Positions 42,489-64,000 of a stretch of DNA of 64,000 nucleotides are shown here, one piece after another. Numbering within the stretch: the first letter of the stretch is position 1; every line of letters starts with the position of its first letter. The notes beneath the pieces are model-generated. The model was not told the DNA's origin. It did no database searches and saw only the letters and a program-made list of their open reading frames with translations. The translations under genes and the position numbers were made by a program. Source of the DNA: Macrostomum lignano (taxonomy: Eukaryota); contig NIVC01000239.1 of NCBI GenBank assembly GCA_002269645.1, positions 62,001 to 126,000 of the forward strand, given 5' to 3'.

Positions 42489-43204
42489 GTATGAATGAAT
42501 GAAAACAGCATTAGGGATGGGATGGACAGCACCCCCTTGGGGGAGAGCTGCAGTGCTCAAATCGCACGGAGAGACTGCATGGATTATAGGCTAAATTGAA
42601 ATATCACGTGCTTCCTTAGTCTCCGTGCTACTCGCAAGGCTCTCATTAGTGATCCGTCAAATTTTGAAAAAGCAAAAGCCATGGCCTAAGTGGAATGGGG
42701 AACGCAGAAAAGCACTGTAGCTAGCCAGACTTCAGTGTCCCAGTGTGGAGACTCAAGAAGGCACTAATTGAGATACTCTTATTTGGTAGTGCTGTACGAA
42801 TCATGACCAAGATTTTCAGCTTGTGCTCGGCTCGGGTTTAAAACTAAACCCGAACGATTATGCTGCAGCCGCTACAAGCGTCACGCCAAACGCTAAACGC
42901 GAGCGCAATTCAATATGTGCACACAGAAAAACGTTTTCATATTAAATTAGTTAGATAAATTATTCAAATTTGTTCGGAATCGATGGCATTGTCAACACAT
43001 CAGACATCCGCATAGGATTGCAATGTTTACCATGCACAAATGTCACACTTAGCAATTAGTAATTTTGCTTTGTTCTCTCTGCTCAACCCTCAGGTCTCAA
43101 TATGCATATAAATGATCTAGCTATTTCGAATTCAACTGAATTCAACAGCATCATTGCAAGGGGTCGGGCACTTTTGGGTTATCGGTAGGGCAAGGGCAAA
43201 TTGG

Positions 43205-46200: not shown

Positions 46201-47680
46201 GCAAGCAAGCTGGGGGGTTACTAGGGAGCTAGCAAGCAAGCTGGAGGGGGGTCACTAGGGAGCTAGCAGGCAAGCTGGGGGGTCACTAGGGAGCTAGCAG
46301 GCAAGCTGGGGGGGTCACTAGGGAGCTAGCAGGCAAACTGGGGGGTCACTAGGGAGCTAGCAAGCAAACTGGGGGTAGGGTCACTAGGGAGCTAGCAGGC
46401 AAACTGGGGGGTCACTAGGGAGCTAGCAAGCAAGCTGCAGGGGGGTCACTAGGGAGCTAGCAAGCAAACTGGGTGTGGGGGTCACTAGGGAGCTAGCAAG
46501 CAAGCTGGGGGGTCACTAGGGAGTTAGCAAGCAAACTGGGGGTGGGGGTCACTAGGGAGCTAGCAAGCAAGCTGGAGGGTCACTAGGGAGCTAGCAAGCA
46601 AGCTGGGGGGTCACTAGGGAGCTAGCAGGCAAACTGGGGGTGGGGGTCACTAGGGAGCTAGCAAGCAAGCTGGAGGGTCACTAGGGAGCTAGCAAGCAAG
46701 CTGGGGGGTCACTAGGGAGTTAGCAAGCAAACTGGGTGTGGGGGTCACTAGGGAGCTAGCAGGCAAACTGGGGGGTCACTAGGGAGCTAGCAGGCAAACT
46801 GGGGGTGGGGTCACTAGGGAGCTAGCAAGCAAGCTGGGGGGGGGGTCACTAGGGAGCTAGCAGGCAAACTGGGGGTGGGGGTCACTAGGGAGCTAGCAGG
46901 CAAACTGGGGGTGGGGTCACTAGGGAGCTAGCAGGCAAACTGGGGGGTCACTAGGGAGCTAGCAAGCAAGCTGGGGTGGGGGTCACTAGGGAGCTAGCAG
47001 GCAAACTGGGGTGGGGGTCACTAGGGAGCTAGCAGGCAAACTGGGGGTGGGGGTCACTAGGGAGCTAGCAGGCAAACTGGGGGGTCACTAGGGAGCTAGC
47101 AAGCAAGCTGGAGGGGGTCACTAGGGAGCTAGCAAGCAAACTGGGGGTGGGGGTCACTAGGGAGCTAGCAGGCAAACTGGGGGTGGGGGTCACTAGGGAG
47201 CTAGCAAGCAAACTGGGGGTGGGGTCACTAGGGAGCTAGCAGGCAAGCTGGGGGGTCACTAGGGAGGTAGCAGGCAAGCTGGGGGGGTCACTAGGGAGCT
47301 AGCAGGCAAACTGGGGGGTCACTAGGGAGCTAGCAAGCAAACTGGGGGTGGGGGTCACTAGGGAGCTAGCAAGCAAACTGGGGTGGGGGTCACTAGGGAG
47401 CTAGCAGGCAAACTGGGGGTGGGTCACTAGGGAGCTAGCAGGCAAACTGGGGGTGGGGGTCACTAGGGAGCTAGCAAGCAAGCTGGAGGGGGGTCACTAG
47501 GGAGCTAGCAGGCAAACTGGGGGTGGGGGTCACTAGGGAGCTAGCAAGCAAGCTGGAGGGGGGTCACTAGGGAGCTAGCAGGCAAACTGGGGGGGGGTCA
47601 CTAGGGAGCTAGCAGGCAAACTGGGGGGAGGGGGTCACTAAGGAGCTAGCTGGCAAACTGGGGGTGGGGGGTCACTGGGG
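43205..47680. repeat. About 31-35-bp G-rich minisatellite, about 4.5 kb
   Basis: GGGGGGTCACTAGGGAGCTAGCAGGCAAGCT with variable G runs. Confidence 0.97.
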
Positions 47681-48349
47681 ATACATGCGTCAAGAAAGCA
47701 ATAGAAATGAATTACAAAATCTCAGTATAATAATTTGGACTAATTTCCAACAAAACTAAACAGTGGCTGGAAAGGAAAAGCCGCTGCTCGAGTTAAAGAA
47801 CTCCAACCAATTAGCGTATTATTATTGGTTATTGATTAGCCAACATGATGGCAATGAAAAAATTTCGGATGAAAAATTTACGAGTAGCACACAAAAGGCA
47901 AGAGAAAAACACACAAGGAAACCACACAACGCTGATATTGGCATTTGTCTAGGAAATGCATTAATTAGATCGACAGAGATTTAAGGTCGGATAGTGGCCC
48001 GCCCGGCAACAAGTAGTTATGTTATCAACAAAGAAGCCTGATACATGTGGACACGATATACCAACCCGGTAAAACAGTGGAATAAATATATAGATTAAAT
48101 AGTAGATAATCCCAAACCAATAATGCACCAATAAAAGTATTCACAATACATAATGAAATTGATACAATACGCTCGTTAGAGATTTCAGTTATAATTATCA
48201 TAAATTAAAAAGTGCACAAACTAGTATTAGAAATTTGATCAAGCCACGTGTGCGCATCAACGCTCACACGGGCGATAGCAAATTTGTGTCATTGATCACG
48301 CGAGAGAAACATGTGCCACACCCCCATCCGTTGGGATTGTGGTGCTGGG

Positions 48350-49783
48350 TGGTCCAGCAACTGAGGATCTGGGGGGGGGCGGTGACCCAGCAACTGAGGA
48401 TCTGGGGGGGGGGCGGTGACCCAGCAACTGAGGATCTGGGGGGGCGGTGGTCCAGCAACTGAGGATCTGGGGGAGGGGGTGGCCCAGCAACTGAGGATCT
48501 GGGGGGGGGGCGGTGACCCAGCAACTGAGGATCTGGGGGAGGGGCGGTGACCCAGCAACTGAGGATCTGGGGGGGGGCGGTGGTCCAGCAACTGAGGATC
48601 TGGGGGAGGGGGTGGCCCAGCAACTGAGGATCTGGGGGAGGCGGTGGCCCAGCAACTGAGGATCTGGGGGAGGGGGTGGCCCAGCAACTGAGGATCTGGG
48701 GGAGGGGGTGGCCCAGCAACTGAGGATCTGGGGGGCGGTGGTCCAGCAACTGAGGATCTGGGGAGGGGGTGGCCCAGCAACTGAGGATCTGGGGGGGGGG
48801 CGGTGACCCAGCAACTGAGGATCTGGGGGGGGGCGGTGACCCAGCAACTGAGGATCTGGGGGGGGGCGGTGACCCAGCAACTGAGGATCTGGGGGGGCGG
48901 TGGCCCAGCAACTGAGGATCTGGGGAGGGGTGGCCGGTGGTCCAGCAACTGAGGATCTGGGGAGGGGGTGGTCCAGCAACTGAGGATCTGGGGGGGGGCA
49001 GTGGTCCAGCAACTGAGGATCTGGGGAGGGGTGGCCGGTGGTCCAGCAACTGAGAATCTGGGGGAGGCGGTGGCCCAGCAACTGAGGATCTGGGGGGGGG
49101 GCGGTGGCCCAGCAACTGAGGATCTGGGGAGGGGTGGCCGGTGGTCCAGCAACTGAGGATCTGGGGGAGGGGGTGGCCCAGCAACTGAGGATCTGGGGAG
49201 GGGTGGCCGGTGGTCCAGCAACTGAGGATCTGGGGAGGGGGTTGTCCAGCAACTGAGGTTTTGGGGGGGGCAGTGGGCCAGCAACTGAGGATCTGGGGAG
49301 GGGTGGCCGGTGGCCCAGCAACTGAGGATCTGGGGGAGGGGGTTGTCCAGCAACTGAGGTTTTGGGGGGGGCAGTGGGCCAGCAACTGAGGATCTGGGGG
49401 AGGGGTGGCCGGTGGCCCAGCAACTGAGGATCTGGGGAGGGGGTGGTCCAGCAACTGAGGATCTGGGGGGGGGCAGTGGGCCAGCAACTGAGGATCTGGG
49501 GGAGGGGTGGCCGGTGGTCCAGCAACTGAGGATCTGGGGGAGGCGGTGGCCCAGCAACTGAGGATCTGGGGGAGGCGGTGGCCCAGCAACTGAGGATCTG
49601 GGGGAGGCGGTGGCCCAGCAACTGAGGATCTGGGGGAGGCGGTGGCCCAGCAACTGGGGAGGGGGAGGCGGTGGCCCAGCAACTGAGGATCTGGGGGAGG
49701 CGGTGGCCCAGCAACTGAGGATCTGGGGGAGGCGGTGGCCCAGCAACTGAGGATCTGGGGGAGGCGGTGGCCCAGCAACTGAG
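48350..49783. repeat. About 30-35-bp G-rich minisatellite
   Basis: CCAGCAACTGAGGATCTGGGGGAGGGGGTGG. Confidence 0.96.
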
Positions 49784-49983
49784 GCTCTTACAGTCTGACA
49801 TAAAAGATTCAAGATCCCTGAAGATATTAGACTATGAAAAGTTGAAAAATTCAAGTGAAAAGTTCGTTGCGAAGTCGAGTCGTGGTTATTAAAAATCAGT
49901 GAGCAGACAGTTTAAAAACGTGAATTCCAAGCACCCTGTATAAACGCGCTAACGCACAACCGAAGGGTGAATGAAGTCCCCGC

Positions 49984-50898
49984 TCAGTCAATCTGGATGA
50001 CCGAGTCCGAGCTGACAGAGCCGATACGAGGCGGCTGCGGCAGGCCCAGTAAAGAGAAGCCGCCGCCTGGCTGGCCGACTCTGCCGCTGGCGCCCCATGA
50101 AGTTTTAACCAAGCCAGACTGGGCAGTGGGCAGCGGGGACTGAGACGCACGATAATTGCTCTGGCCAAGCACGCGCGGCCTCTGCAGTTGAATTCGTCCG
50201 GAGGATGCAGTGCCAGCAGCAGCAACAGCAGCAGTAGAACTTGAAGCAGAATAAGGCATTGGTCTAGGCTGCATAGGGGGCACGCTGTCCAAGTCTATAA
50301 TAGGCCTGGCTGGCCGGCTAAGATGCATTTGACGCTTTGGCCGACAAAATGGCAGCGAGCCCTTGGCTTTGGCAGCGACAGAAGAAGAATCAGACGGCTT
50401 GGTCGGCTGCCACAGCGACACAATCTGCACAGAGTCGGAATCGTTAGCCTGATCTTCCACTGCATCCTGGCCGGAGACGATCAGCTGTTCGGCCTCCTGA
50501 TCGCCAGCGGGATTTTTATCCTTCTCCGACTGCGGCCCGGCCTCGCCTATCTGCCCGGTGCCGTCTCTGTCCTTCTCCCCGGCTCATCCCCGTTGGCGCC
50601 ATCGTCCGGCCGCTCCGCGCCGCCATCGTTGCCCTCGCCGTCAGCTTCGCCGTCGCTTTTATTGTCGTTTTGACCGTCGTCTTCGTCTTCATCGGACGAC
50701 TCGTCGGCATCGTCGTCGTCGCTGCTGCTTGAATTGTCGTCTCCGTCGGCGACGCCGGCAGCTGCGGCGGCGTCCTCCGGCATGGCTGAGTAGGCGGACA
50801 GCACCGAGGCGAGCTTGGCGCTGCCCTGGGCGGCGTTGCGCTCCAGGCGCTGGCGAAGATCGGCGTCGGCCTCGGCGGGGTCGGCCTCCAGGCTGCCG
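49984..50898 (-). CDS. DAXX: DAXX exon 3 (acidic and S/P-rich C-terminus with SIM-like motifs; frameshift near 50577-50580)
   Basis: ccccAG acceptor at 50899; ORFs 50547..50804 and 49984..50460 join if one G is added. Confidence 0.75.
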
Positions 50899-53800
50899 CT
50901 GGGGATTGGGATTGTTCATTTTTGATGGGGAGCGGACAACTGCGCGCCATTCACTGTAGATTTTTGCTATCTACAGTGATCTATTTGATAATAGATTACG
51001 CAGAGTCGATAGGTAAAAAGTAGATATTAGAGTAGACAACAGGTAGAGAAGAGTTATATATACGGTAGACACACTGAAGTGGATAGACACAGTAAATATA
51101 GAAATAGACAGAGTAGAAATCGGGGTAGGCAGGGTAGATATCGGGATAGACATGGTAGATATCGGGATAGACAGGGTAGATATCGGGATAGACAGGGTAG
51201 ATATCGGGATAGACAGGGTAGATATCGGGATAGACAGGGTAGATATCGGGATAGACAGGGTAGATATCGGGATAGACATGGTAGATATCGGGATAGACAG
51301 GGTAGATATCGGGATAGACAGGGTAGATATCGGGATAGACAGGGTAGATATCGGGATAGACATGGTAGATATCGGGTAGGCAGGGTAGATATCGGGATAG
51401 ACAGGGTAGATATCGGGTAGGCAGAGTAGATATCGGGATAGACAGGGTAGATATCGGGATAGACAGGGTAGATATCGGGATAGACAGGGTAGATATCGGG
51501 TAGGCAGAGTAGATATCAGGATAGACAGGGTAGATATCGGGATAGACAGGGTAGATATCGGGATAGACATGGTAGATATCGGGTAGGTAGGGTAGATATC
51601 GGGATAGACAGGGTAGATATCGGGTAGACAGAGTAGATATCGGGTAGGCAGGGTAGATATCGGGTAGGTAGGGTAGATATCGGGATAGACAGGGTAGATA
51701 TCGGGTAGGCAGAGTAGATATCGGGTAGGCAGGGTAGATATCGGGTAGGTAGGGTAGATATCGGGATAGACAGGGTAGATATCGGGATAGACAGGGTAGA
51801 TATCGGGATAGACAGGGTAGATATCGGGATAGACAGGGTAGATATCGGGATAGACAGGGTAGATATCGGGATAGACAGGGTAGATATCGGGATAGACAGG
51901 GTAGATATCGGGATAGACAGGGTAGATATCGGGATAGACAGGGTAGATATCGGTGGGCCGATGGAGTAGAGTAGGCAGGCTAGAGTAGGTTTTGTGTTAG
52001 GCAGGAAACAAAAATATATATAAAGCCACTCACCCGTCCGGCAGGTCGGTGAACAGACAGTCGAACAGGTCCCGCTTACGCCGATCTTGAAGCTGCTCGC
52101 CAACGTCTTTAAATACGGTCTCAGCGCAGCGACGGACCTCGGCCTGAGACCAGCCCAATTTGTGGCGCCTGTTGCACCAGTTGACAATTTTCAGCACTTT
52201 TGGCAGATCGGGGAATCCGCGCCGCCTATTAACGTAGCACTCGATGAGCTCGCCGATCTCCGGGTGGGCCGAGCAGTCGTAACGAAATCTGCGGCCAGAA
52301 AGTAGTGCGGCCGATTGGGGGGCCCGGCGAAGGCGGCACAGGCTGTTGTAGACCTGGAAAGTGTACAGCTGATACTCATTAACAAGCAAAACGATAGGAT
52401 TATAAAGTGGGAAAATTGTCGGCTAACAGTCAAAAATAGATTGGGTTGACTACTTTTACTACAGATACAAATGAGTGGCCTGGTAGAAAAAATGACACGA
52501 ACAATCTAGACTTGTCAGCGAGACAAATCATGACCATCGATTTGTCAGTGATAAGAATCATGACCATAGACTTGTCAGGGAGAAGAATCATGATCATAGA
52601 CTTGTCAAGAATAAGAATCATGACCAAAGACTTGTCAGGGAGAAGAATCATGACCATCGATTTGTCAGTGATAAGAATCATGACCATAGACTTGTCAGGG
52701 AGAAGAATCATGATCATAGACTTGTCAAGAATAAGAATCATGACCAAAGACTTGTCAGCGATAAGAATCATGACCATAGACTTGTTGGCGATAAGAATCA
52801 TGACCAAAGACTTGTTGGCGATAAGAATCATGACCAAAGACTTGTCAGCGATAAGAATCATGACCAAAGACTTGTCAGCGATAAGAATCATGACCATAGA
52901 CTTGTCAGCGATAAGAATCATGACCATAGACTTGTTGGCGATAAGAATCATGACCAAAGACTTGTTGGCGATAAGAATCATGACCAAAGACTTGTCAGCG
53001 ATAAGAATCATGACCAAAGACTTGTCAGCGATAAGAATTATGACCAAAGACTTGTCAGCGATAAGAATCATGACCATAGACTTGTTGGCGATAAGAATCA
53101 TGACCAAAGACTTGTTGGCGATAAGAATCATGACCATAGACTTGTCAGCGATAAGAATCATGACCATAAACTTGTCAAGGATAAGAATCATGACCAAAGA
53201 CTTGTCAGCGATAAGAATCATGACCATAGACTTGACAGCGCTAAGAATCATGACCATAGACTTGTTGGCGATAAGAATCATGACCATAAACTTGTCAAGG
53301 ATAAGAATCATGACCAAAGACTTGTCAGCGATAAGAATCATGACCATAGACTTGTTGGCGATAAGAATCATGACCATAGACTTGACAGCGCTAAGAATCA
53401 TGACCATAGACTTGTCAGCGATAAGAATCATGACCATAAACTTGTCAAGGATAAGAATCATGACCAAAGACTTGTCAGCGATAAGAATCATGACCATAGA
53501 CTTGTTGGCGATAAGAATCATGACCATAGACTTGACAGCGATAAGAATCATGACCATAGACTTGTTGGCGATAAGAATCATGACCAAAGACTTGTTGGCG
53601 ATAAGAATCATGACCATAGACTTGTCAGCGATAAGAATCATGACCATAAACTTGTCAAGGATAAGAATCATGACCAAAGACTTGTCAGCAATAAGAATCA
53701 TGACCATAGACTTGTTGGCGATAAGAATCATGACCATAGACTTGACAGCGATAAGAATCATGACCATAAACTTGTCAAGGATAAGAATCATGACCAAAGA

Positions 53801-54975
53801 CTTGTCAGCAATAAGAATCATGACCATAGACTTGTTGGCGATAAGAATCATGACCATAGACTTGACAGCGATAAGAACATGACCAAAAACTTGTTGGCGA
53901 TAAGAATCATGACCATAGACTTGTCAGCGATAAGAATCATGACCATAGACTTGTTGGTAATAAGAATCAGGACTTTCAGACTCCTTTCGCCTTGTGATCC
54001 ATGTCAGGCAGACAGCACACACACCTGCACAGCGCGCTGCTTCAGCCGGTCCTCCTGCAAGTAGACGCTGCTCTCCGAGCTCAAATCATTCAGACTCATC
54101 TCGAGCTGCTGCAGTCGCTTAATCTTAGTTAATATGCGGCACAGGCAGTCCTGCAGCGCCCGAGCTTTCTGACGCTCCTCAGGCGTCAAGTCGGCGTCGT
54201 CGCCAGCTCGATTATCGAAATCGCTGGCCGATAACTGGCCGGGCAGCTTCGGCAGCGGGCCAGACGAAGTGGACGGCCGATCTGCCGGCAGGCGAGGATC
54301 CGGCGAATCGGCCAGGCGAGTCAAAGCGATTCGACGCTTCTTCGGCAAGGGTTCGGCTTCCTCTTCTTTATGATCTTCCTCGTTCCGCTCGATTTGTCGA
54401 ACATGATCTTGCTGCGAATCCGTATCTGCTTTTGTGGAGCCGCCGGATTTCTCCGTCTCATTATCCGAGTCATTCTCTCCGTCATCATCGTCTGCGGAGC
54501 TAGGTTCAGCTTCCTTAGCTGCATCGGCCTCTTCACTATTGCCAGCAGCGTCATCATCATCATCGGACGCTTTGCCGGACACGTCCTCGCCGGACGCTTT
54601 CTCAGTTTCATCGTCGACACGTCGCTCCGGTACGGCGTCGCTTGGAGCATCGGCAAGAGACTCTTGCAGGTCTAGCCGCGAATCCAGCGCGCACACCAGT
54701 TTAAAAGCGCCGGCGCAAATGTCCCGCCGGAGACTGTCGAACAGGCGACGCCCTCCGGCCGGCGTCAGCCGATTGACGGACCGGCTGGCCACGGCGGCGT
54801 CAAAATGGCGTCGCAGGCTGCGCAACAATATCCTGTCGTAGTCGTCATTGTGCAACAGATTCGATAGGAATGACTCCAGCTGGCACCACGCGGCCTCAAA
54901 TTCGGCCAATTCGCCGCCAGCCAACGCTGATCCAGCCTCGTCATGCTGGCGTTGATGCCGCTGTTGATTCTGCAT
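49984..54975 (-). CDS. DAXX: Death domain-associated protein 6 (DAXX, H3.3 chaperone) homolog, 3 exons, about 728 aa if a 1-nt frameshift is corrected
   Basis: Exons 54975(or 54969)-54025, 52353-52034, 50898-49984. The histone-binding domain is recognisable: KIKRLQQLEMSLNDLSSESSVYLQEDRLK, FPDLPKVL, FKDVGEQLQDRRKRDL, DPAEADADLRQRLERN; acidic tract; C-terminal SIM-like PIIDLD and SVIQID. Confidence 0.85.
51100..51952. repeat. 21-bp minisatellite (DAXX intron 2)
   Basis: GGGTAGATATCGGGATAGACA. Confidence 0.96.
52034..52353 (-). CDS. DAXX: DAXX exon 2 (histone-binding domain)
   Basis: ttccAG acceptor, GTGAGT donor, phase 0-2. Confidence 0.88.
52520..53965. repeat. 30-bp minisatellite (DAXX intron 1)
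   Basis: ATCATGACCATAGACTTGTCAGCGATAAGA. Confidence 0.96.
54025..54975 (-). CDS. DAXX: DAXX exon 1 (helical bundle-like region, acidic linker, start of histone-binding domain)
   Basis: ORF 54004..54978; donor GTGTGT at 54024. Confidence 0.85.
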
Positions 54976-55097
54976 CAAAAATAGGCATCATAGTAGAGCA
55001 CGGGGCACACTTGTGATATCAGGGCTTATGCTCTAGCTTAGGCTTACCCCTTTCCTATAGGTATAACAGGTAAATAGAAAAGAAAGCGACTCTAGAC

Positions 55098-55353
55098 TAG
55101 GGATCGGCAAACTTTTTTATCTCAAGGGCGAGATAGAAAATCTAGCGCATGACTGCTAAGGGGAGAGAGGAGGGAACCGAGTATAGAGAGGAGAAATAGG
55201 AGTAAGGAGAGGCGGAGACAAGAGGAGAGGAGAGAAAGGAGACGAGAGAGTAGATTAGAGAAGAGAGCTGAGAAGAGACAAACCTTGAGAGGGCCGGATA
55301 GAGAGGCTTCGCAGGCCGCATGTGGCCCGCGGGTCGGGGTTTGCCAACCCCTG
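55098..55353. mobile_element. hAT (Charlie-like) MITE, 256 bp
   Basis: TIRs TAGGGATCGGCAAAC / GTTTGCCAACCCCTG; perfect 8-bp TSD CTCTAGAC at 55090-55097 and 55354-55361. Confidence 0.85.
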
Positions 55354-56030
55354 CTCTAGACGATTCTGAAACGACCAGATGTCACGGTAAAAGTCGTCTA
55401 AGAGTCAATTTGAGGCGCTTTATTGTCTGCGACTCAGGGGTCGTATCTGAGGCGTGCTGGAGTCGCTGTAGAACCACTGAGTTGCGTCTAAAGCGCATCC
55501 GCGTCACTTTATGAATTAGAATCGCATTTTGCATTTATAACAAACTCTTAGTCTACTTGAGTTAGTAGAAAGTTAAGCGCTAACACAACGACTCTTGGAT
55601 GACTTACTCGCGACTTGCAAGTATAGAATGACATGCGAATTATTGTCTATGGCTAAGACATAGGTTTCGCCTATGCTATGATTTCGGCCATAGATAAGAG
55701 TGAACAATACTGTTTTTGCTGTTATCTATGGCCAAAGCTAATTACCCATAATCCCAGATAATGGAATTACAGTCTGCTCATAATCTGGTATAAGAGGAGG
55801 GTGGTATACAACTGTAACTACAACTTATCAAAACATTGTTCAACATCTTCTGTAGGTAAAACGAACTGAATGAAAAAAAAAGAAGATCCAAATTAATACT
55901 CAATGTTGTTAACAAAAATGTTTTTATTTTCTATTAGCTAAACAAACATTAACTAGAAAACTGTTTCTCAAGTCGAAAAGCGCAGTCACGGAGTCACAAC
56001 ATTGCAGCAAATGTAAAACAGACTTCTACT

Positions 56031-59000
56031 TCATTCGTAGTACTTCCTATTGCCAGGCACAATCGGCGACTGTAATAGGCCGCGCGTGACAACAGGCGCC
56101 GGCGGCTCGGCATTGGGCGGCACAATGCCCAGCTCAGAATGGTACTGCTTCACCAAGTCTGTCAGGCTCTGCAATTTTGATTGGGTTGCTAATCAATTAG
56201 GATCTGTGCTTTTAGCTGGGTATCTATATGGCCATTCGGTGCAGTTTGAGGGGCCAATTAATGGTTGGTTTGAAAATAATTTACCAATGCCTTGGTTGAT
56301 AATTTAAAACTTATTAAGATTTATGATGCACATGCTATAAACTAAACATACATGAGACACACGTTTTAAATCATATACCTTAAAGCTGTAGGGCTCATAA
56401 ATAGCCAACTGTTGAAGCATCTTGCGGTTAAGCTGTATGTTCATCCGACCCAAGCCGTCGATCAGCATTTTGCCAGGGATACCGTGCTGAGCGCAAGCAG
56501 CGTCAATTCGTTCGTCGCACAGCTGTTTAAACCTGTCCTTGCGAACAGCGCGCATCGCGTTCATGTGCTGGAAGGCCTTGATAACGCGCTGCTCAGCTAG
56601 ACGAAAGCATCGGCTGGATCGGCCGCGGAATAACTACAAATTTGTGGTTGATATTGTGAGGGAATTAAATGATAGCTATTCACTCGCTACGTACTACTGC
56701 GACAGTCCATAGAAGCAGTAGGGTATTTGGCATCTACATTTGCCAATGAAATATGCTGGACTTTTTAAAGATACGACCTCAAAAGATATTTATTGCAAGA
56801 ATTGACCAAGGGGTTGTTGAGCCTAACAAGCAGAGAGTCAACAGGCCATTTTATATCTATCTTATGCTACTGACCTATTCTACTTATATGTGTAGTATTG
56901 ATAGGAGTATGAAGGGGCTGCTGATTTCAGCGGCCTGAAGCTTCGATCTAAATCTATGTAATTAAAACCAAAATGGTTTTCTTCCCTATAGAGGTTAGGC
57001 ATGAGAACCTATAGCAACTTAATATAAAATTAATAAAAGCTTCTATGGATACCACAAATATTTACAGCAAAACTTTTTAGTCTATCTATTACTATGCCTC
57101 TTAGTCTAAGCAAGACTACATGGATTGGTAGTATCCTAAGGAAAGGCCCTATAGAAAAAAGCTAAATGCTTGCTTTTTAACACTTGACAACAATATTCTA
57201 GCCTATACAACCCAAGTTACACTAAATTCTACTATCATTGCAAGGTTTGAAAGATTTCTTTAACTTCTATCTTGTAATATTGTGCTGGTTTAAGCACGCG
57301 TTAAAAATGACCACAATGCTTAAAAGACAAAACACAAAAATATTGAAAAATTATTATAGAAAGCATTTTAATATAAAATAAACTATTTTGATACTTGATA
57401 AATTTTCAAAAGTAACATGGACAGAAGAATAATCACATGATGACTGCTCTTAGCCAATAAAAATTATATATACCATTCATTGTCCCTGACTAATAGTACT
57501 ATAAGTATGACTACTATAAACTTTTAGCAGTGCAAGCACTTATTTTAGTGCCACAAGCATATATTTTAATGCTGTAAGAATTTTTTTAGCATTGCACGTA
57601 TTTACTATGTTTATTATATAGCTATCTATACATATTATTTTCGATCAATATCTTTTTTTTAGATTAGACTATTTGTTAACTTTGTTTCTCTTTTTACCTA
57701 CTAATTTTTGTCTATACTAGACCCCCATAGCCTTATAAAGGGGATAAATCCCTTTTTGCCCCTTTACCTATGCCAGTGGGACCTTTCTTTGATTAAAATT
57801 TAGCTAAATCATATATACAAAAATTCAACTTGGCAATTATTCATATAATTATATATGCCAATATTTTATTTTTAATTCTATATTCTAATTGATATTTTAT
57901 TTTAATTTAACTTTCAATTTAATTTAAATATTATTAGACTTTTTGGCATTCTTTTGTTGTTTAATACCTATAGCCTAATTGATTACTTATATCAATTTTG
58001 TTATAAGATACCTTATGGAAAATAGTGAGAATTGAAATAGACATAGCCATGATTGAAAAAATACTATAATTATAGCTTACTAGAGCACAATCCTTATATT
58101 CACTTTTATTATATGATGCCCTAAATGGAGAATTTGTTAAGAAAAATTGTAAAACAAAAATGAGGGGGTGTGTGGAAATAAAAATGAGAGATAATAATAA
58201 AAATTAGATGTAACCATACAAGAATCCTACAATTGTAGCTTAATTATTAGAGCACAATTCTTATATTCACTTTCATTATATGATGCCTTTGAGACAATTT
58301 ATTACTGTCATATAAAGATTGTGCTCTAATAAGCTATAGGATTATTGCAATCATGACTATATCTATTGCAATTCTCACTATTTTCCAAGGATATATTCTA
58401 CACAAATTTGGCAAAAGCAAATTTGGCAACAATTTAGTGTAGGCAACTTTGGTGACAAGTCTTTTTAAGTCTAATTTATCAAATATAACAACTTTGGTAA
58501 TTGCTAATTTGGCAATAAAGCAAATTTAGGACTGTCAACACTATATATAATCTAATACCATCATACCAAAAGAATCAATAAATTTATATAGAATTATTCT
58601 ATTGCCAAATTTGTCTATGGTGAATCTCTGTCACCAAATTTGTTTGTTGCTGAATTGGTTAGTACCTATTTTTTAATTGCCACATTTAGAGCATGGCTGC
58701 CATGTCTCTAATAGTGACTAGGTCCATATTTATAGACATGGCTGCCATGTATATAGTTTCTGCATTATAGACATGGCCACCATGTTTATAAGTATCACTA
58801 TTAGAGACATGGCTGCCATGTTGATGAAACTTGCATGGCAGCCATGTCATTAATATTGAATGAGTTCATACTTAGAGACATAGTGGGTGGCTTTATTGTT
58901 AATATTGAATGGGTTTATACTTAGAGACATGGTGGATAGCCATGTCTATAATATTGGAGCTTATAGGCATGGCTGGCATGTATATAATCATCAATATAGA

Positions 59001-60372
59001 ATGCATGTTCTGTAGGGCTCTCGCATAAGCAAATGGTGGCTTAGTGGACAAGTTAATTGCCTTATGATTGCATGAAAAGGTTTGAATCCCAAGTGGTTAG
59101 TTTTTTTAATTTGATTTTTTTTAAAAAACAAAATTAAATTAAAATTTTGAGGGTAACTTTAAATTTTAAAGTGCAGCCATAATTATATATGTAGCTTAAA
59201 AATAATTTTTCTGATATATATCGCCACATTTTGTCATGAGTTAAACATTATATAGTTTTACTAAACACATAAGACTTGAGAATAAATGAAAATCTAGAAA
59301 TAACTGAAGAGCATGAACAAAAATGTGGCAAACTTCTTATAATATAAAATTTGTAATAATTTGTAAGTTCAAATACTTACAGATATAGCTACATATATAT
59401 TTGCAGTTGCAGATTAAGATTTAGCAAATTTTTCTTATTCAAAAATTTAATTAAAATTATTATTTTATTTTACTTAAAAAACTTTAAAAGTTCAAGATGG
59501 AAAAAATTCTATTCACTAAAAAAAATTTAAATAAAAAAATGTGGACCTTTTGGGATTTAAACCTTTCTACATGCAATCACAAAGCATATCCACTAAGCCA
59601 CCATTTGCTTATAAGAGAGCCCTACAAAACACACATTTTATATTGATGATAATAGCTGTGCCTTTAAGCTCAAATTATAGACATGGCCACTGTGCCTATA
59701 AGTACTCTATTTTTCAACAGGTATCATAACAAAATTAATATAAAATGTAAGTATTATATTTATAAAATAAAATAATTCTAATTCTTAATGCTACTAAATA
59801 TTAGAACTCTAGCTATGCATAGATCAATAAAAATATAGGCCTTGATACAAAAATTTGTATTTAGTTTTGAACATAGCATAGAGGGTGCGCTGCATAGAGT
59901 ATACTCTAAAAATATACTATGTCTATAATTTTTTGCATATGTGATACCTTTCTGAGTTTAACTTTAGGGCTAGGCATACACCCGACATCTTTAAAACAAG
60001 CCCCACCCCTTATATTGGAAAGTCCTAGTGAGACACTCACTGAACTGAAGTCCCTAATATTGCTAATTGAAATTGCTAATTAAAATTGAGACTATCAACT
60101 ATGCTATGCTATCTAATATAGTATACTATCTGGTAGCATAAATGGATGCAAAAATATTAGACATGGTGACTATCACATATTCAGACTGATGTTAGACTTA
60201 AAGAACAGAATATGCAATAGCCAATACCAATACAAGGCTAAAACAACAAGATTACTTCAAATATTTTACTTACAAAGGAAAACTGAAGATATAAATTGCG
60301 AAGATAGAAGGGATCATTATTTCGATAAATTTTAGGGATTCTTCGTACCCATAAAGGACAGGTGAGGTGCAT
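56031..60372 (-). CDS. MRPL20: Mitochondrial ribosomal protein L20 (bL20m), 3 exons, 163 aa
   Basis: Exons 60372-60274 (MHLTCPLWVRRIPKIYRNNDPFYLRNLYLQFSF, GTAAGT donor), 56633-56379 (LFRGRSSRCFRLA...NIQLNRKMLQQLAIYEPYSFK), 56168-56031 (SLTDLVK...YYE*); all phase 0; L20 signature LNRKML..LAIYEP.SFKSL. Confidence 0.9.
58011..58390. mobile_element. Foldback/MITE-like element with about 45-bp imperfect TIRs
   Basis: GGAAAATAGTGAGAATTGAAATAGACATAGCCATGATTG inverted against CAATCATGACTATATCTATTGCAATTCTCACTATTTTCC; internal direct and inverted TAGAGCACAAT repeats; TSD unclear. Confidence 0.6.
58690..58980. repeat. Irregular repeat of palindromic CATGGCTGCCATG-like motifs
   Basis: AGACATGGCTGCCATG variants recur about 7-8 times. 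Confidence 0.65.
59035..59092 (+). mobile_element. Degenerate tRNA-like head (SINE or pseudo-tRNA)
   Basis: TGGCTTAGTGG A-box and GGTTTGAATCCC B-box variant at tRNA-like spacing; no cloverleaf. Confidence 0.35.
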
Positions 60373-61110
60373 ACTGATATGCTAATATTAAAACACTAAG
60401 ACAAGTGAAGTTTTATAGTATATAAAGTTTATTTTTACCAAAAATTCAGATTGGAACCATTCAGTGAGTCCGACTAGATGTAAACCGTTCGATACTTCAA
60501 TTTTTTTGAAATTTAAAAACACACTTTGGTTATAACACAATAAGTTGTTTGTTAGATTTAATGGTACTTAAATGCTGAAAAAATTGAACTACTTAATTTA
60601 AAAACTAATATTTTTTTAATCAACTTTTTAAAAAGACTCAAGTCTTTCTGTCGACATAGGGCCTTTTCATATTACCAATTCCAGAACCAGAATCGGTTCG
60701 GAATTCCAAGAAAAACAGCAGTATAACTATTAAACTCTGTTAATTTATTTGACTGCCTTAACAACCTAACTTAGCACAATTTTTCAATTTCTTCTTGGTG
60801 ATTGTCATTCAATAATAAAAACTTTATAGCACGTATCTCCCTCTAGTTATGGAGACAAAAAGTTATACTTCACAAATTGGTTCTGGTTCTGGAACCAGAG
60901 CAAGCAATATGAAAAGGCCCATAGATTTGCCGTCAAATTTTAATTCTTAAATGAGATGTGCAAATAATATCAGACTCATTGTTTCAGAAGCACTTGCTAG
61001 AAGTTAAAAAGTGTAAAGCACCTATTGCCAAGCTCTTTGGCTTTAAATCGTCTTCATTAAATATCAGTTATCGTGTTTATTATTGTAAAAAACAGTTTTT
61101 GTTTGACACA
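60373..61110. promoter_or_regulatory. Putative bidirectional promoter region for MRPL20 and PGD
   Basis: Divergent ATGs about 740 bp apart; CpGs retained here but depleted on both sides. Confidence 0.6.
60659..60920. mobile_element. PIF/Harbinger-like MITE, 262 bp
   Basis: Perfect 15-bp TIR GGGCCTTTTCATATT; subterminal inverted TTCCAGAACCAGAA; 3-bp flanking duplication ATA. Confidence 0.7.
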
Positions 61111-61334
61111 ATGGCATTGGAAAGGTAGGTAGTTTAACTTTTTAATTTATGAAAAAATGGTTACTTTTTATTTAATTTTGACTTTGCCTAAATGTTCCAA
61201 AGTTATTGAGAATATTAAATACAAGTAAAGAATTTCAAATCTAAAATCACTTTTTTAGTTGCGACATTGGCCTGATTGGACTTGCTGTCATGGGACAAAA
61301 TTTGATCCTAAATATGAATGATCATGGATTCAAG
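61111..61334 (+). CDS. PGD: 6-phosphogluconate dehydrogenase, decarboxylating; first two coding exons (gene continues beyond the window)
   Basis: Exons 61111-61124 and 61259-61334 give [30 protein letters not shown], the canonical 6PGD Rossmann start; GTAGGT and GTAAGT donors. Confidence 0.9.
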
Positions 61335-62977
61335 GTAAGTTTCAAAATTTGAAACTATTAAGTATAATTGTTTTATTTATTTAGGGCCTATATTTCTTTG
61401 CCTTTCAATTTGATTCATTTTATTTTATTTAAAATAATAATCAAATAAATCAAATGGAAAATAAATCAAATCTTTTCTAAAATAATAATCAAATTAAAAT
61501 AAAAATAATAAAATAATTTGACTAACTACTTATTTGTTCCTAGAAATAAAAGTAGCAATAGAGCATTTTTATATTTATATAGCCAACAAAATAAAAGTAA
61601 AAGGTACAGCCCATTTTGGCAAAGGAATTTTTAGCAAAAGATACTTCAGTAAAAGTGAATTTTTAGCTTGTATACATATACATTTTGGCAAAAGAAGGGG
61701 ACCAGTTTGGCAAAAAGATAGGCTGCTTTTATTTATAATTTCAAATTTATTACTTTGGTAACCATAGCTTTTAAAAAAATTATTCATTGACTGCCTTGCA
61801 TATATATACAGTTTGTAAATGTACTCAAAACTTGGCTAGTAGCTATGTTATTTATATGCAAAGTGCAATTGATAGATTAGCCCTAGGGATGATAGTATGG
61901 TTTCTTAGTTTTAGTTCCTAAATTATACTTTAAATTCTGCACTAATAGAATAACATCTAATAAAATAGTTTACTAATCAAATAATAAAATTGCTACAGAA
62001 TAAAAAGATATAGTGATAAAATATTCTTTTTATCATTAAGATATATTTAATGATTATTAAGGTATCATTGAAAGTTAGAAGTGTGCTTATATAAAGGGCT
62101 GGCTACTTTTCAAGCTCTTCAAATCCAAGTGCCAATGCAAGGAATTCCAGTTGGCATTGAAAGTTGATGGTTCAAAAAGCAACATACTTTCTGCAACTCA
62201 AAAATGGAGAGGATAGAACTAGAAACCTAGTCATCCCCAAAAAGGCAATCAATCATATGTGTAGTCTGTTAGATAGAGTGTGGAAAGAGAAAAACAGATA
62301 AAGAGCTGTTTGTTCTGAAGGGTATGGGTCAATGGCTGCAAGAAAAGTTCTTTCCTATTGTTCTTGCTAATATTCACACACATACAGCTTGGATCACAGT
62401 GAATGCTGTGCAAGGGTGATGGCCAAGTTGTTTGCCAGAATTCGCTTACATCACTGGTGTAATAGTCAGAGGGAGCTCAGCAGAGAAAGTGAGGGCACAT
62501 GAAAGGAATGAAAAGAACTGAAGAGAAGCTGATGCAAATTAGTGTTGTTTAACTGCCATTTGAAGTGGTTTTTACATTTGATCCTTAATAAGATCTGTTA
62601 TTAACTGCTTTTGCTACTTTTTGCTATAAATTATTCTTTGCTAGTTGATACTACTGGCCATAGCCTTCACAACAAAAGTAGTGCGCATGAATTTTAATTT
62701 GGCTTTGTGGAAAATGGTTGATTGAGCATTCTGTGTATATTCTATGGCTCCAATTGGTAAGTAATATGAGGACTGCAGTCTAGTGGGGATTATGAAATAG
62801 CTTATCAATCTACCGATTTCTTGTGGATTTGTGATGACAAACTGGAGGTCAGTCCTGAGGATGTACTTTTGCTGCATTCAGTACAATTGTAATCAGTTTT
62901 GGAGTTCAAGGCTAAAGTTTACCCAAACCTGTCAAACAGATTTCTGGCATTCATTGGCTGTCACACTGTTATGCATA

Positions 62978-63180
62978 AAGGTCCGAAAAAAGGTCCACTG
63001 AGGGTCCGAATGAGGAGGTCCGCACCGTACACATATAGGGACCTTCAGGTCCGAAAGTAGAGGACCATATAAAGGTCCGCTAAAGGTCCGTATGAGAAGG
63101 TCCGCACCGTACATATATAGGGACCGTGAAGGTCCAAATGTACGGAAGGTCCGAAAGTATAGGTCCACAATAGGCATGGA
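62978..63180. repeat. Irregular AAGGTCCG motif cluster
   Basis: More than 10 copies of (A/G)GGTCC(G) with short spacers and a duplicated AGGTCCGCACCGTACA.ATATAGGGACC block. Confidence 0.7.
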
Positions 63181-64000
63181 TGTCGCATTTTTCTGCCTGA
63201 GCGTGGCCCTATATAGCTGACATGCCTCAGTGGAAAATACCCGTTTAAAAAAAACCATGCAAGATCCTGATTCCAGTGAAGCTATAAGATGTTCATTAAA
63301 CTGATGTGCATTGCATAGAACGATAGTTTCCATAAAGATGGATAAAAATAAAAATGTATTTTTTATCAAGCATTATTACCATGCATGTTTAGATTGGAGC
63401 TTTACTGAATCAAATATTAATGACAAAGCCGATTATGTAATACATGAATAACGGAAAAAAGAAATTACATGGCAAACTTGGTAGTAAATAAAGCAAAAGG
63501 GTTGAACAGCAATTTTTTTTCATTGATGAGCAACGCATGACTAATGGTACATTTCGATCAAACTGGAAAGAAATAAAGAGGAAATTGCTAGTTTCTTAAA
63601 CGCAAAAGAGCAAACATTGAAAAATAATAAGTCAATGAAGCACAACAAGGGTTGAAAAAACGAATTTGAAAATACACAAATTTTGAGACAACTACGGGGT
63701 GTCTGCGTAATTTTTAAACTGAAATTCCAGGTTTTACAATACCCGGTTTAATAATCCATATTGGCAGAAAATACTTACTCGTGGCATTATGTATACCTGG
63801 GGCAATATTTAACACAATATTGTAATGTACACAACCGACTTACATTGCAAAAAAATGTAAAACTCGAAGTAAAAAATAAAAAATGCGTCTTACAATAACT
63901 ATTACAAATGTCCCCTCTTCTGAAAAATAGCAGTATTAAGAACATAACATAAAAAACGAACTTACTTTATGTTGACCTATGTTAAACATCGCACAAGAAT

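What the first reader, a model, noticed from the sequence alone, without database searches (positions are those of the whole stretch)
56640..62980. CpG-depleted AT-rich domain flanking a CpG-retaining divergent promoter
Composition shifts abruptly inside MRPL20 intron 1 from CpG-rich to AT-rich. By manual count there are about 6 CpGs in 57301-60290 (3 kb) and about 3 in 61271-62980 (1.7 kb), but about 14 in the roughly 1 kb holding the MRPL20/PGD starts (60290-61270). A tRNA-like B-box inside the domain reads GGTTTGAATCCC, a CG-to-TG change from the canonical GGTTCGAATCCC, whereas the SINE at 33740 keeps its CG. In invertebrates, 5mC deamination depletes CpG in methylated housekeeping gene bodies while promoters stay unmethylated. 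Inference: germline methylation is confined to a few kb either side of this promoter. It spares MRPL20 exons 2-3, DAXX and FNDC3, which would be an unusual promoter-proximal methylation domain for a flatworm-like genome.
Basis: partly seen in the sequence, partly recalled or inferred. Interest (0 to 1): 0.72.

Follow-up and report, generated by a model that had tools for sequence, protein, structure and literature searches.

The report
AT-rich CpG-depleted block around promoter
In the flatworm Macrostomum lignano, the few kilobases of intron and spacer DNA around the shared start of two housekeeping genes are very AT-rich and have lost almost all CpG sites except in the core promoter. This footprint, expected of DNA methylation with a protected promoter, recurs in three gene copies, but it is inferred from sequence alone at one locus.

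Summary
The window is Macrostomum lignano contig NIVC01000239.1 (record = window + 62000). From about 56.95 to 62.98 kb GC is 0.25-0.32 and CpG obs/exp is about 0.1 (12 CpGs where 112 are expected). A 0.8 kb island (60290-61072) holding the MRPL20 and PGD starts keeps 12 CpGs. Two paralogous contigs show the same layout, so it is not an assembly chimera. The right edge at 62980 is only an insertion boundary: AT-rich, CpG-poor DNA resumes at 66-68 kb, and the copy lacking the insert reaches PGD exon 3 about 180 bp later. Among the three copies, 8 of 20 CpG sites in the shores vary. This compares with 0 of 14 in the island, 2 of 98 at synonymous exon CpG sites and 8 of 89 in neighbouring non-coding DNA. 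Non-CpG C/G sites also vary about twice as often in the shores. Best reading: old promoter-proximal non-coding DNA near an AT-biased mutational equilibrium, with methylation-type CpG decay and a protected promoter. Literature reports DNMT1, DNMT3 and low 5mC in this species. Whether methylation is truly confined to these few kb is unresolved. Interest is moderate.

The parts
56034..56168 (-). MRPL20 exon 3 coding part (GC 0.59, GC3 0.71, CpG o/e 0.95), outside the domain
   Evidence: Translation completes the 163-aa protein, which is 100% identical to PAA87279.1.
56379..56633 (-). MRPL20 exon 2 (GC 0.53, GC3 0.65, 22 CpGs, o/e 1.23), which forms the left border of the domain
   Evidence: its CpGs are conserved in all three copies
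56634..56949 (.). Transition zone at the 3' end of MRPL20 intron 1: GC falls from 0.44 to 0.37 and only 6 CpGs remain
56950..60289 (.). Left shore: the AT-rich, CpG-depleted bulk of MRPL20 intron 1 (GC 0.284; 8 CpGs against 67 expected; 123 GpC)
   Evidence: none of its CpGs is conserved across all three paralogs
58016..58387 (.). MITE-like inverted-repeat element inside the shore (arms of 53 and 29 nt)
58983..59654 (.). Inverted pair of degenerate tRNA-like units (A-box TGGCTTAGTGG; B-box GGTTTGAATCC, with partner GGTTTAAATCC) around an AT-rich spacer
   Evidence: ARAGORN and Rfam report nothing here
60274..60372 (-). MRPL20 exon 1 (33 codons, GC 0.35, GC3 0.33, 3 CpGs)
60290..61072 (.). CpG-retaining island: MRPL20 exon 1 and 5' leader, the spacer, and the PGD upstream region and leader. 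GC is 0.31 with 12 CpGs (o/e 0.64, or 0.83 without the MITE)
   Evidence: 0 of 14 CpG sites vary among the paralogs while other C/G sites vary at 5.1%
60659..60920 (.). 262-bp MITE-like insertion in the spacer, present only in the window copy (34-nt inverted ends GGGCCTTTTCATATT...)
   Evidence: Absent from L002 and L003; inverted repeat I9.
61111..61124 (+). PGD exon 1 coding part (MALE-)
61259..61334 (+). PGD exon 2 ([26 protein letters not shown]; GC3 of exons 1+2 is 0.43, with 1 CpG)
   Evidence: tblastn with my recalled human PGD sequence gives 92% identity
61073..62980 (.). Right shore: PGD upstream region and leader, exons 1-2, intron 1 and the start of intron 2 (GC 0.31; 4 CpGs against 45 expected). 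The sub-block 62.0-62.98 kb has GC 0.37, CpG o/e 0.12 and TpG/CpA o/e 1.34/1.40
62981..64000 (.). Start of a roughly 3-kb GC-richer, CpG-replete insert (to about 66000; GC 0.43, o/e 0.89) absent from paralog L003. It opens with a cluster of GGACCT/AGGTCC motifs and carries a nested CIDE-N-domain gene at 64346-65956 on the minus strand, beyond the window

Best explanation
The block is old, essentially unique, promoter-proximal non-coding DNA. It comprises MRPL20 intron 1, the bidirectional spacer and PGD introns 1-2, and it sits between MRPL20 exon 2 and, in the ancestral layout, PGD exon 3.

Two processes appear to act on it. The first is a strongly AT-biased substitution regime in which C/G sites of every context mutate about twice as fast as in neighbouring DNA. 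This holds GC near 0.2-0.3. The second is a further, CpG-specific decay of about 7-fold or more, of the kind caused by germline 5-methylcytosine deamination. This holds CpG near 10% of expectation.

A core of 0.5-0.8 kb containing both gene starts escapes the CpG decay but not the AT bias. This behaviour fits a hypomethylated bidirectional promoter. The GC- and CpG-rich sequence around the block consists of coding exons, young minisatellites and young insertions.

Shown here: the composition, the boundaries, the reproducibility in three copies, the region-specific CpG turnover and the insertion history. Inferred: that 5mC is the cause, and that the island is unmethylated.
For: 1. Composition and counts are as described.

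2. The same architecture occurs on three contigs. Each has PGD divergent from MRPL20, followed by DAXX.

3. CpG dinucleotides conserved/variable across the three copies: shores 2/15, island 7/1, flank non-coding 37/12, flank coding 134/7 (shore against flank non-coding P=5e-6).

4. Counting only CpGs present in the window copy, the variable fractions are: shores 8/20, island 0/14, synonymous exon CpG sites 2/98, flank non-coding 8/89. Non-CpG C/G sites vary at 5.7%, 5.1%, 1.8% and 2.5%. A/T sites vary equally in shore and flank (2.9% and 3.1%), so the neutral clock is the same.

5. The island is not generally constrained, because its other C/G sites vary as in the shores. Its CpGs nevertheless never vary.

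6. Polarised changes give GC* of about 0.15-0.19. A simulation with the shore's own spectrum gives an equilibrium GC of 0.18. It needs a CpG transition multiplier of about 8-16 to reach CpG o/e 0.1.

7. The block 62.0-62.98 kb has GC 0.37 but CpG o/e 0.12, with TpG/CpA at 1.34/1.40. This pattern is expected if CpG decays faster than GC.

8. Young insertions into the block are CpG-replete: a mariner in L003 (o/e 0.61), a 0.7-kb insert in L002 (1.30) and a 3-kb insert in the window (0.89). In the 3-kb insert, shared by two copies, 4 of 6 transitions are at CpG.

9. Literature reports that M. lignano retains DNMT1 and DNMT3 and has low 5mC (PMC11292947, PMC9246332, PMC10658182).
Against: - No methylation data were available. 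The primary methylome paper (Wasik 2015) is not held in the library.
- Event counts are small: 8 variable CpG sites in the shores.
- Polarisation with three mosaic paralogs is unreliable. Many shore CpGs look like copy-specific gains.
- Flank non-coding DNA also shows CpG excess variability (3.5-fold; 4.4-fold in polarised counts). After normalisation the shore/flank contrast is therefore only about twofold.
- Stability of synonymous CpGs in exons could reflect selection for GC-ending codons rather than lack of methylation.
- The low GC3 of the 5' exons (0.38 against 0.67) could be the usual 5' codon-usage effect.
- 'Old' is inferred only from composition and from degenerate inverted repeats.
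Confidence: 0.55

Rival explanations
1. Germline methylation is a discrete domain limited to the few kb on either side of this promoter. It spares the rest of both gene bodies, DAXX and FNDC3. The compositional block is the direct and only footprint of that domain.
For: - CpG turnover is 38-40% in the shores, against 9% in adjacent non-coding DNA, 2% at synonymous exon CpGs and 0% in the island.
- CpG-containing minisatellites in FNDC3 and DAXX introns show no CpG transition excess (0.035 against 0.047 per site).
- CpG-rich zones extend 150-300 bp beyond the exons into the introns.
- A simulation needs k of about 8-16 in the shores, whereas flank estimates are 1-4.
Against: - CpG decay cannot produce GC 0.28.
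- The 62980 edge is an insertion edge, and the state resumes at 66-68 kb.
- After normalising to non-CpG C/G sites, shore against flank is 7-fold against 3.5-fold, which is not significant.
- The satellite test is crude, because repeat units are not independent.
- A similar patch in L004 is not next to an annotated start.
Confidence: 0.25
2. A uniform mutational regime combined with differences in sequence age. All unconstrained DNA in this genome decays towards about 20% GC with moderate CpG hypermutability. The block is simply the oldest surviving non-coding DNA. Everything else is young (satellites, transposons) or selected (exons, promoter motifs). No regional difference in methylation is needed.
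For: - Polarised GC* is similar in shore (0.15) and flank non-coding DNA (0.19), and the W>S rates are the same.
- Insertions present in only one or two copies are GC- and CpG-rich.
- Most other introns are filled with minisatellites.
- The polarised flank CpG excess is 4.4-fold.
Against: - Non-CpG C/G sites vary 2.3 times more in the shore than in the flank on an equal A/T clock (77/1341 against 13/512). The regime is therefore not uniform.
- Island CpGs are invariant although other island C/G sites vary at the shore rate.
- k=4 predicts an equilibrium CpG o/e of about 0.2-0.34, not 0.1.
- The 5' exons share the AT bias.
Confidence: 0.15
3. No methylation is involved. AT-rich DNA melts more readily, so cytosines deaminate faster in all contexts. 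This creates a self-reinforcing AT-rich block, and CpG loss is a context effect of that process.
For: Elevated variability at non-CpG C/G sites in the shore. AT-richness and CpG loss occupy the same span.
Against: - CpG sites are still about 7 times more variable than other C/G sites within the same block.
- GpC is in excess (o/e 1.74) while CpG is at 0.11.
- The equally AT-rich island keeps its CpGs.
- The species is reported to have DNMT1 and DNMT3.
Confidence: 0.08
4. The composition was inherited from intrinsically AT-rich, CpG-poor mobile elements (MITEs, tRNA-derived SINEs) that built the introns, rather than acquired in place.
For: Several MITE-like inverted repeats and a tRNA-like inverted pair lie in the block.
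Against: - No part of the block matches anything in about 85 kb of other M. lignano sequence.
- CpG turnover is measured in place among paralogs.
- Exons and the spacer share the AT bias.
- The mobile elements that are demonstrably young here are GC- and CpG-rich.
Confidence: 0.07
5. Assembly chimera or foreign DNA joined near 56.6-57.3 kb.
For: Only the abruptness of the compositional shift.
Against: - The same junction, the same spliced MRPL20 gene across it and the same flanking genes are present on three independent contigs at 92-99% identity.
Confidence: 0.01

Closest known systems
Vertebrate- or sponge-type hypomethylated promoter island inside methylated, CpG-depleted DNA
   Same: CpG is depleted about 10-fold in the flanks, with TpG/CpA excess. 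A short promoter segment keeps near-expected and evolutionarily stable CpGs. The promoter is bidirectional and serves housekeeping genes.
   Different: The island is AT-rich (GC 0.31) and fails the GC criterion for CpG islands. The depletion covers only some kilobases rather than the whole genome. Downstream exons and much neighbouring DNA keep CpG o/e near 1.
Invertebrate mosaic gene-body methylation (Ciona, oyster, honeybee, annelids)
   Same: Housekeeping genes, an unmethylated start region, and CpG depletion inside the transcribed region.
   Different: In canonical gene-body methylation the exons are the main depleted targets. Here MRPL20 exons 2-3 and PGD exons 3 to the last have CpG o/e 0.74-1.23, and their CpGs are stable. 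Only the first introns and 5' parts are depleted.
Isochore-like compositional domains driven by cytosine deamination and AT-biased mutation (Fryxell and Zuckerkandl model, recalled from general knowledge)
   Same: There is a regional excess of C>T at all C/G sites, and AT-richness and CpG loss occupy the same span.
   Different: The scale is a few kb, not hundreds of kb, and the borders coincide with exons.
Fungal repeat-induced point mutation (RIP) AT-rich blocks
   Same: Sharp AT-rich blocks next to GC-normal DNA.
   Different: RIP depletes CpA/TpG and enriches TpA. Here CpA and TpG are in excess (1.17 and 1.23) and TpA is 0.94. The sequence is also unique rather than repeated, and RIP is not known in animals.

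Membership tests
Methylated DNA with a hypomethylated promoter island | CpG-specific depletion in the flanks (low CpG, GpC not low) | tested here: met
   CpG o/e is 0.11 and GpC o/e is 1.74 in 5.2 kb of shores. 12 CpGs are observed against 112 expected.
Methylated DNA with a hypomethylated promoter island | Excess of the deamination products TpG and CpA | tested here: met
   TpG 1.23 and CpA 1.17 in the shores, against 0.98 and 0.99 in adjacent non-coding DNA. The excess is modest, and many genomes show some.
Methylated DNA with a hypomethylated promoter island | CpG sites mutate faster than other C/G sites in the flanks but not in the island | tested here: met
   Shores: 8/20 CpG sites vary against 5.7% of other C/G sites. 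Island: 0/14 against 5.1%. The numbers are small.
Methylated DNA with a hypomethylated promoter island | 5-methylcytosine present on flank CpGs and absent from the island in germline DNA | not testable with these tools
   No read-level or methylome data are available. Wasik 2015 is not held.
Methylated DNA with a hypomethylated promoter island | The organism encodes maintenance and de novo CpG methyltransferases | not tested
   Taken from the literature only: DNMT1 and DNMT3 are retained and low 5mC is reported (PMC11292947, PMC9246332).
Classical CpG island (Gardiner-Garden and Frommer criteria) | Length over 200 bp, CpG o/e over 0.6 and GC over 0.5 | tested here: not met
   The length (783 bp) and o/e (0.64, or 0.83 without the MITE) are met. 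GC is only 0.31.
Canonical invertebrate gene-body methylation | CpG depletion of coding exons through the body of broadly expressed genes | tested here: not met
   CpG o/e is 1.23 and 0.95 for MRPL20 exons 2 and 3, and 0.74-1.15 for PGD exons 3 to the last in L003. Synonymous CpG sites vary at 2/98.
RIP-type AT-rich block | CpA/TpG depletion with TpA enrichment in repeated DNA | tested here: not met
   (CpA+TpG)/(ApC+GpT) is about 1.47 by o/e values and TpA is 0.94. The sequence is unique in the sample.

The most novel reading that the evidence does not exclude
Macrostomum lignano may have a non-canonical methylome. Its low global 5mC would be concentrated on short, AT-rich, promoter-flanking or first-intron blocks of some housekeeping genes rather than on exons or transposons. 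The core promoters would be protected. Faster cytosine deamination in these blocks would drive a self-reinforcing, kilobase-scale AT-rich compartment. That would be a new arrangement of animal DNA methylation and the first pattern described for a free-living flatworm.
Probability: 0.2. Interest if true: 0.65.

Novelty: new member of a known kind. Interest (0 to 1): 0.4.

Why it matters
[quoted passage not shown] Most flatworms have lost DNMT1 and DNMT3. This locus gives a sequence-level prediction of where germline 5mC has acted in M. lignano: on first-intron and spacer DNA beside a housekeeping bidirectional promoter, and not on the promoter core or the downstream exons.

If public bisulfite or nanopore data confirm the prediction, the pattern would differ from canonical invertebrate gene-body methylation. 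It would also give a cheap compositional marker (CpG/GpC ratio together with GC) for mapping methylated compartments and protected promoters in a repeat-rich genome. If the data do not confirm it, the block is an ordinary product of AT-biased mutation acting on old DNA.

Tried and rejected
- **Rfam and ARAGORN on the window:** nothing found, so the tRNA-like units are degenerate.
- **Direct look-up of my spliced MRPL20 model:** Solved through the homolog search.
- **Wasik 2015 methylome paper:** not held. Two further literature searches found no description of the M. lignano methylation pattern.
- **Genome-wide sampling through transposon proteins:**
  - The integrase search returned only one M. 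lignano contig.
  - The mariner transposase search returned no M. lignano protein.
  - Generality therefore could not be tested beyond about 95 kb.
- **L003 file:**
- **Majority-rule polarisation of CpG changes:** judged unreliable. Most singletons fall on the L003 branch and the copies are mosaics. It was replaced by conservation counts and outgroup-polarised counts.
- it had a 1-bp coordinate error and was redone.
- **Same-family comparison of the domain's tRNA-like unit with the SINE at 33740:** no detectable similarity. The B-box CG>TG reading therefore remains an anecdote.
- **Rejected explanations:** RIP, assembly chimera and an origin from intrinsically AT-rich transposons (see rivals).


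Full report
**Identity of the sequence.**
- My three-exon MRPL20 model is 163 aa. Exon 1 is 60274-60372, exon 2 is 56379-56633 and the exon 3 coding part is 56034-56168, all on the minus strand. It is 100% identical to Macrostomum lignano PAA87279.1 (BOX15_Mlig015846g2).
- The gene lies on contig NIVC01000239.1 of assembly GCA_002269645.1. The fetched locus L001 is identical to window 46031-64000 and extends it to 70372. Record coordinate = window + 62000.
- PGD starts divergently at 61111. Exon 1 is 61111-61124 and exon 2 is 61259-61334, which is 92% identical to my recalled human PGD sequence.
- The window also holds FNDC3-like exons, GPCR-like ORFs, an LTR-retrotransposon integrase ORF and DAXX. 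Its introns are packed with minisatellites.

- Expected and observed CpG counts:

| Segment | GC | CpG observed | CpG expected |
|---|---|---|---|
| 56950-60289 | 0.284 | 8 | 67 |
| 61073-62980 | 0.310 | 4 | 45 |
| Island 60290-61072 | 0.309 | 12 | 18.7 |

- GpC is over-represented (o/e 1.74). TpG and CpA are raised (1.23 and 1.17) relative to adjacent non-coding DNA (0.98 and 0.99).
- No other non-satellite kilobase of the first 56 kb has GC below 0.35 together with CpG depletion.

- On the left, GC and CpG fall over about 350 bp starting at the exon 2/intron 1 junction.
- On the right, 62980 is an insertion edge. From 62981 to about 66000 lies a GC 0.43, CpG o/e 0.89 segment. It carries a nested gene on the opposite strand with a CIDE-N domain (E=1.4e-7).
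- From 66.0 to 68.0 kb the AT-rich, CpG-poor state returns, with 4 CpGs against 47 expected.
- Paralog L003 lacks everything beyond 62980. There PGD exon 3 follows about 180 bp after the equivalent point, and CpGs reappear about 130 bp before that exon.
- The ancestral block is therefore everything between MRPL20 exon 2 and PGD exon 3.

**It is not an assembly artefact.**
- Two further contigs, L002 (NIVC01001991.1) and L003 (NIVC01001990.1), carry the same arrangement of PGD divergent from MRPL20, followed by DAXX. They show the same compositional profile at 92-99% identity.
- The copies differ by young insertions into the block. These are a 262-bp MITE-like element in the spacer of the window copy only (60659-60920), a frameshifted 1.3-kb Tc1/mariner in L003, and a 0.7-kb insert at a different site in L002.
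- The 1.3-kb, 0.7-kb and 3-kb inserts are GC-richer and keep more CpG (o/e 0.61, 1.30 and 0.89 for the 3-kb insert). The 262-bp MITE has GC 0.35 and o/e 0.38.
- Without the MITE, the island still has 9 CpGs in 521 bp (o/e 0.83).

**CpG loss is region-specific and still active.**
- CpG dinucleotides conserved in all three copies versus variable:

| Region | Conserved | Variable |
|---|---|---|
| Shores | 2 | 15 |
| Island | 7 | 1 |
| Flank non-coding | 37 | 12 |
| Flank coding | 134 | 7 |

- Counting only CpG sites present in the window copy:

| Region | CpG sites variable | Other C/G sites variable | A/T sites variable |
|---|---|---|---|
| Shores | 8/20 | 5.7% | 2.9% |
| Island | 0/14 | 5.1% | 1.5% |
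| Flank non-coding | 8/89 | 2.5% | 3.1% |
| Exons | 2/98 (synonymous CpG sites) | 1.8% | 1.4% |

- On the same A/T clock, shore cytosines of every context are therefore about 2.3 times more mutable than flank cytosines. CpGs are a further 7-fold more mutable within the shores.
- The island is not generally constrained, yet its CpGs are invariant.
- The roughly 3-kb insert shared by L001 and L002 has 4 of its 6 transitions at CpG. This hints that DNA placed in the block acquires the same behaviour, but the numbers are tiny.
- CpG-bearing minisatellites elsewhere in the window show no CpG transition excess (0.035 against 0.047 per site). That test is crude because repeat units are not independent.

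**AT-richness needs its own cause.**
- Converting every CpG could lower GC by only a few points.
- Outgroup-polarised changes give S>W 35 against W>S 15 in the shores (GC* about 0.15), and 12 against 4 in flank non-coding DNA (GC* about 0.19).
- A simulation using the shore's non-CpG spectrum settles at GC 0.18. It gives CpG o/e 0.94, 0.65, 0.34, 0.24 and 0.11 for CpG transition multipliers of 1, 2, 4, 8 and 16.
- The observed 0.1 therefore calls for roughly 8-16-fold hypermutability. That is the range I recall for methylated CpGs in mammals.
- The sub-block 62.0-62.98 kb (GC 0.37, CpG o/e 0.12, TpG/CpA 1.34/1.40) looks like DNA in which CpG has decayed ahead of GC.
- The 5' exons inside the block have GC3 of 0.38, against 0.67 for MRPL20 exons 2-3 (P=2e-4) and 0.45-0.79 for downstream PGD exons. 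This could be a regional effect or the usual 5' codon-usage effect.

**Interpretation.**
- The simplest account that covers all of this is old, unique, promoter-proximal non-coding DNA near an AT-biased equilibrium. It would be subject to methylation-type CpG decay, with a protected, presumably unmethylated, core bidirectional promoter.
- Secondary sources state that M. lignano, unlike planarians and parasitic flatworms, retains DNMT1 and DNMT3 and has low 5mC. They also state that the pattern is unknown in free-living flatworms (PMC11292947, PMC9246332, PMC10658182).
After normalising to other C/G sites, the shore-to-flank contrast is about twofold and rests on few events.
- Exon CpG stability could reflect selection.
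- A similar AT-rich, CpG-poor patch occurs in an unrelated locus (L004 13000-15550) with no annotated gene start beside it.
- The AT-rich stretch at 66-68 kb does lie just upstream of the nested CIDE-N gene. The DAXX upstream region is not depleted. The link with gene starts is therefore suggestive but not general in this small sample.

**Comparison with known systems.**
- The block works like a methylated region with a hypomethylated promoter island.
- It fails the GC criterion for a classical CpG island.
- It fails the defining exon depletion of canonical invertebrate gene-body methylation.
- It is not RIP-like.
- Direct evidence for 5mC could not be obtained here.

**Verdict.** This is a real and reproducible compositional feature, best explained by known processes. 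It yields a testable prediction about an undescribed methylome. Interest is moderate.

Noticed in passing
window 60659-60920: A 262-bp MITE-like element with 34-nt inverted ends sits inside the MRPL20/PGD bidirectional spacer in this copy only. Both paralogs have the empty site. It may alter promoter spacing or activity in this copy.
   Followed up: partly
window 62981-64000, continuing to about 66000 (L001 4372-7392): PGD intron 2 holds a nested gene on the opposite strand with a CIDE-N domain (Pfam E=1.4e-7). It is 536 aa in this copy and 347 aa in L002. It is flanked at 62975-63166 by a cluster of GGACCT/AGGTCC motifs and is absent from paralog L003. It is unclear whether it is a mobile insertion or was deleted in L003.
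   Followed up: partly
L003 10617-11915; L002 about 10802-11517: MRPL20 intron 1 has independent young insertions in the paralogs. L003 has a Tc1/mariner with inverted ends and a frameshifted transposase. L002 has a different 0.7-kb CpG-rich insert about 175 bp away. The window has both sites empty.
   Followed up: partly
L001 against L002, whole locus: Identity between the two copies is mosaic. It is about 99.8% across the insert and distal PGD intron 2, about 99% near the promoter, and 95-97% in parts of MRPL20 intron 1. This suggests gene conversion or recombination between the duplicated loci.
   Followed up: no
window 43195-47628: A 4.4-kb minisatellite (31-nt unit GGCAAGYTGGGGGGTCACTAGGGAGCTAGCA, GC 0.63) contains essentially no CpG. 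Several other intronic arrays are likewise CpG-free, while others carry one or two CpGs per unit. Window-level CpG o/e is therefore dominated by the choice of repeat unit.
   Followed up: partly
window 58983-59654: An inverted pair of degenerate tRNA-like units, with A-box and B-box motifs, surrounds a 540-bp AT-rich spacer. ARAGORN and Rfam do not call it. It is conserved in L003.
   Followed up: partly
L004 13000-15550 (NIVC01000180.1): A second AT-rich (GC 0.23-0.36), CpG-poor patch lies in an unrelated locus, 4.6 kb upstream of the nearest annotated gene start (a TM2-domain gene). Its sequence looks unique apart from one short tandem repeat.
   Followed up: partly
window 36358-37806 (-): A 482-aa integrase/RNase H ORF of an LTR retrotransposon, CpG-replete (o/e about 1). 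Its closest named relative in M. lignano is 59% identical (BOX15_Mlig029604g3).
   Followed up: no
shores 56950-60289 and 61073-62980, against flank 54979-56949: Non-CpG C/G sites vary 2.3 times more often among paralogs in the AT-rich shores than in adjacent non-coding DNA, while A/T sites vary equally. This is a regional excess of cytosine mutability in all contexts that CpG methylation alone does not explain.
   Followed up: partly
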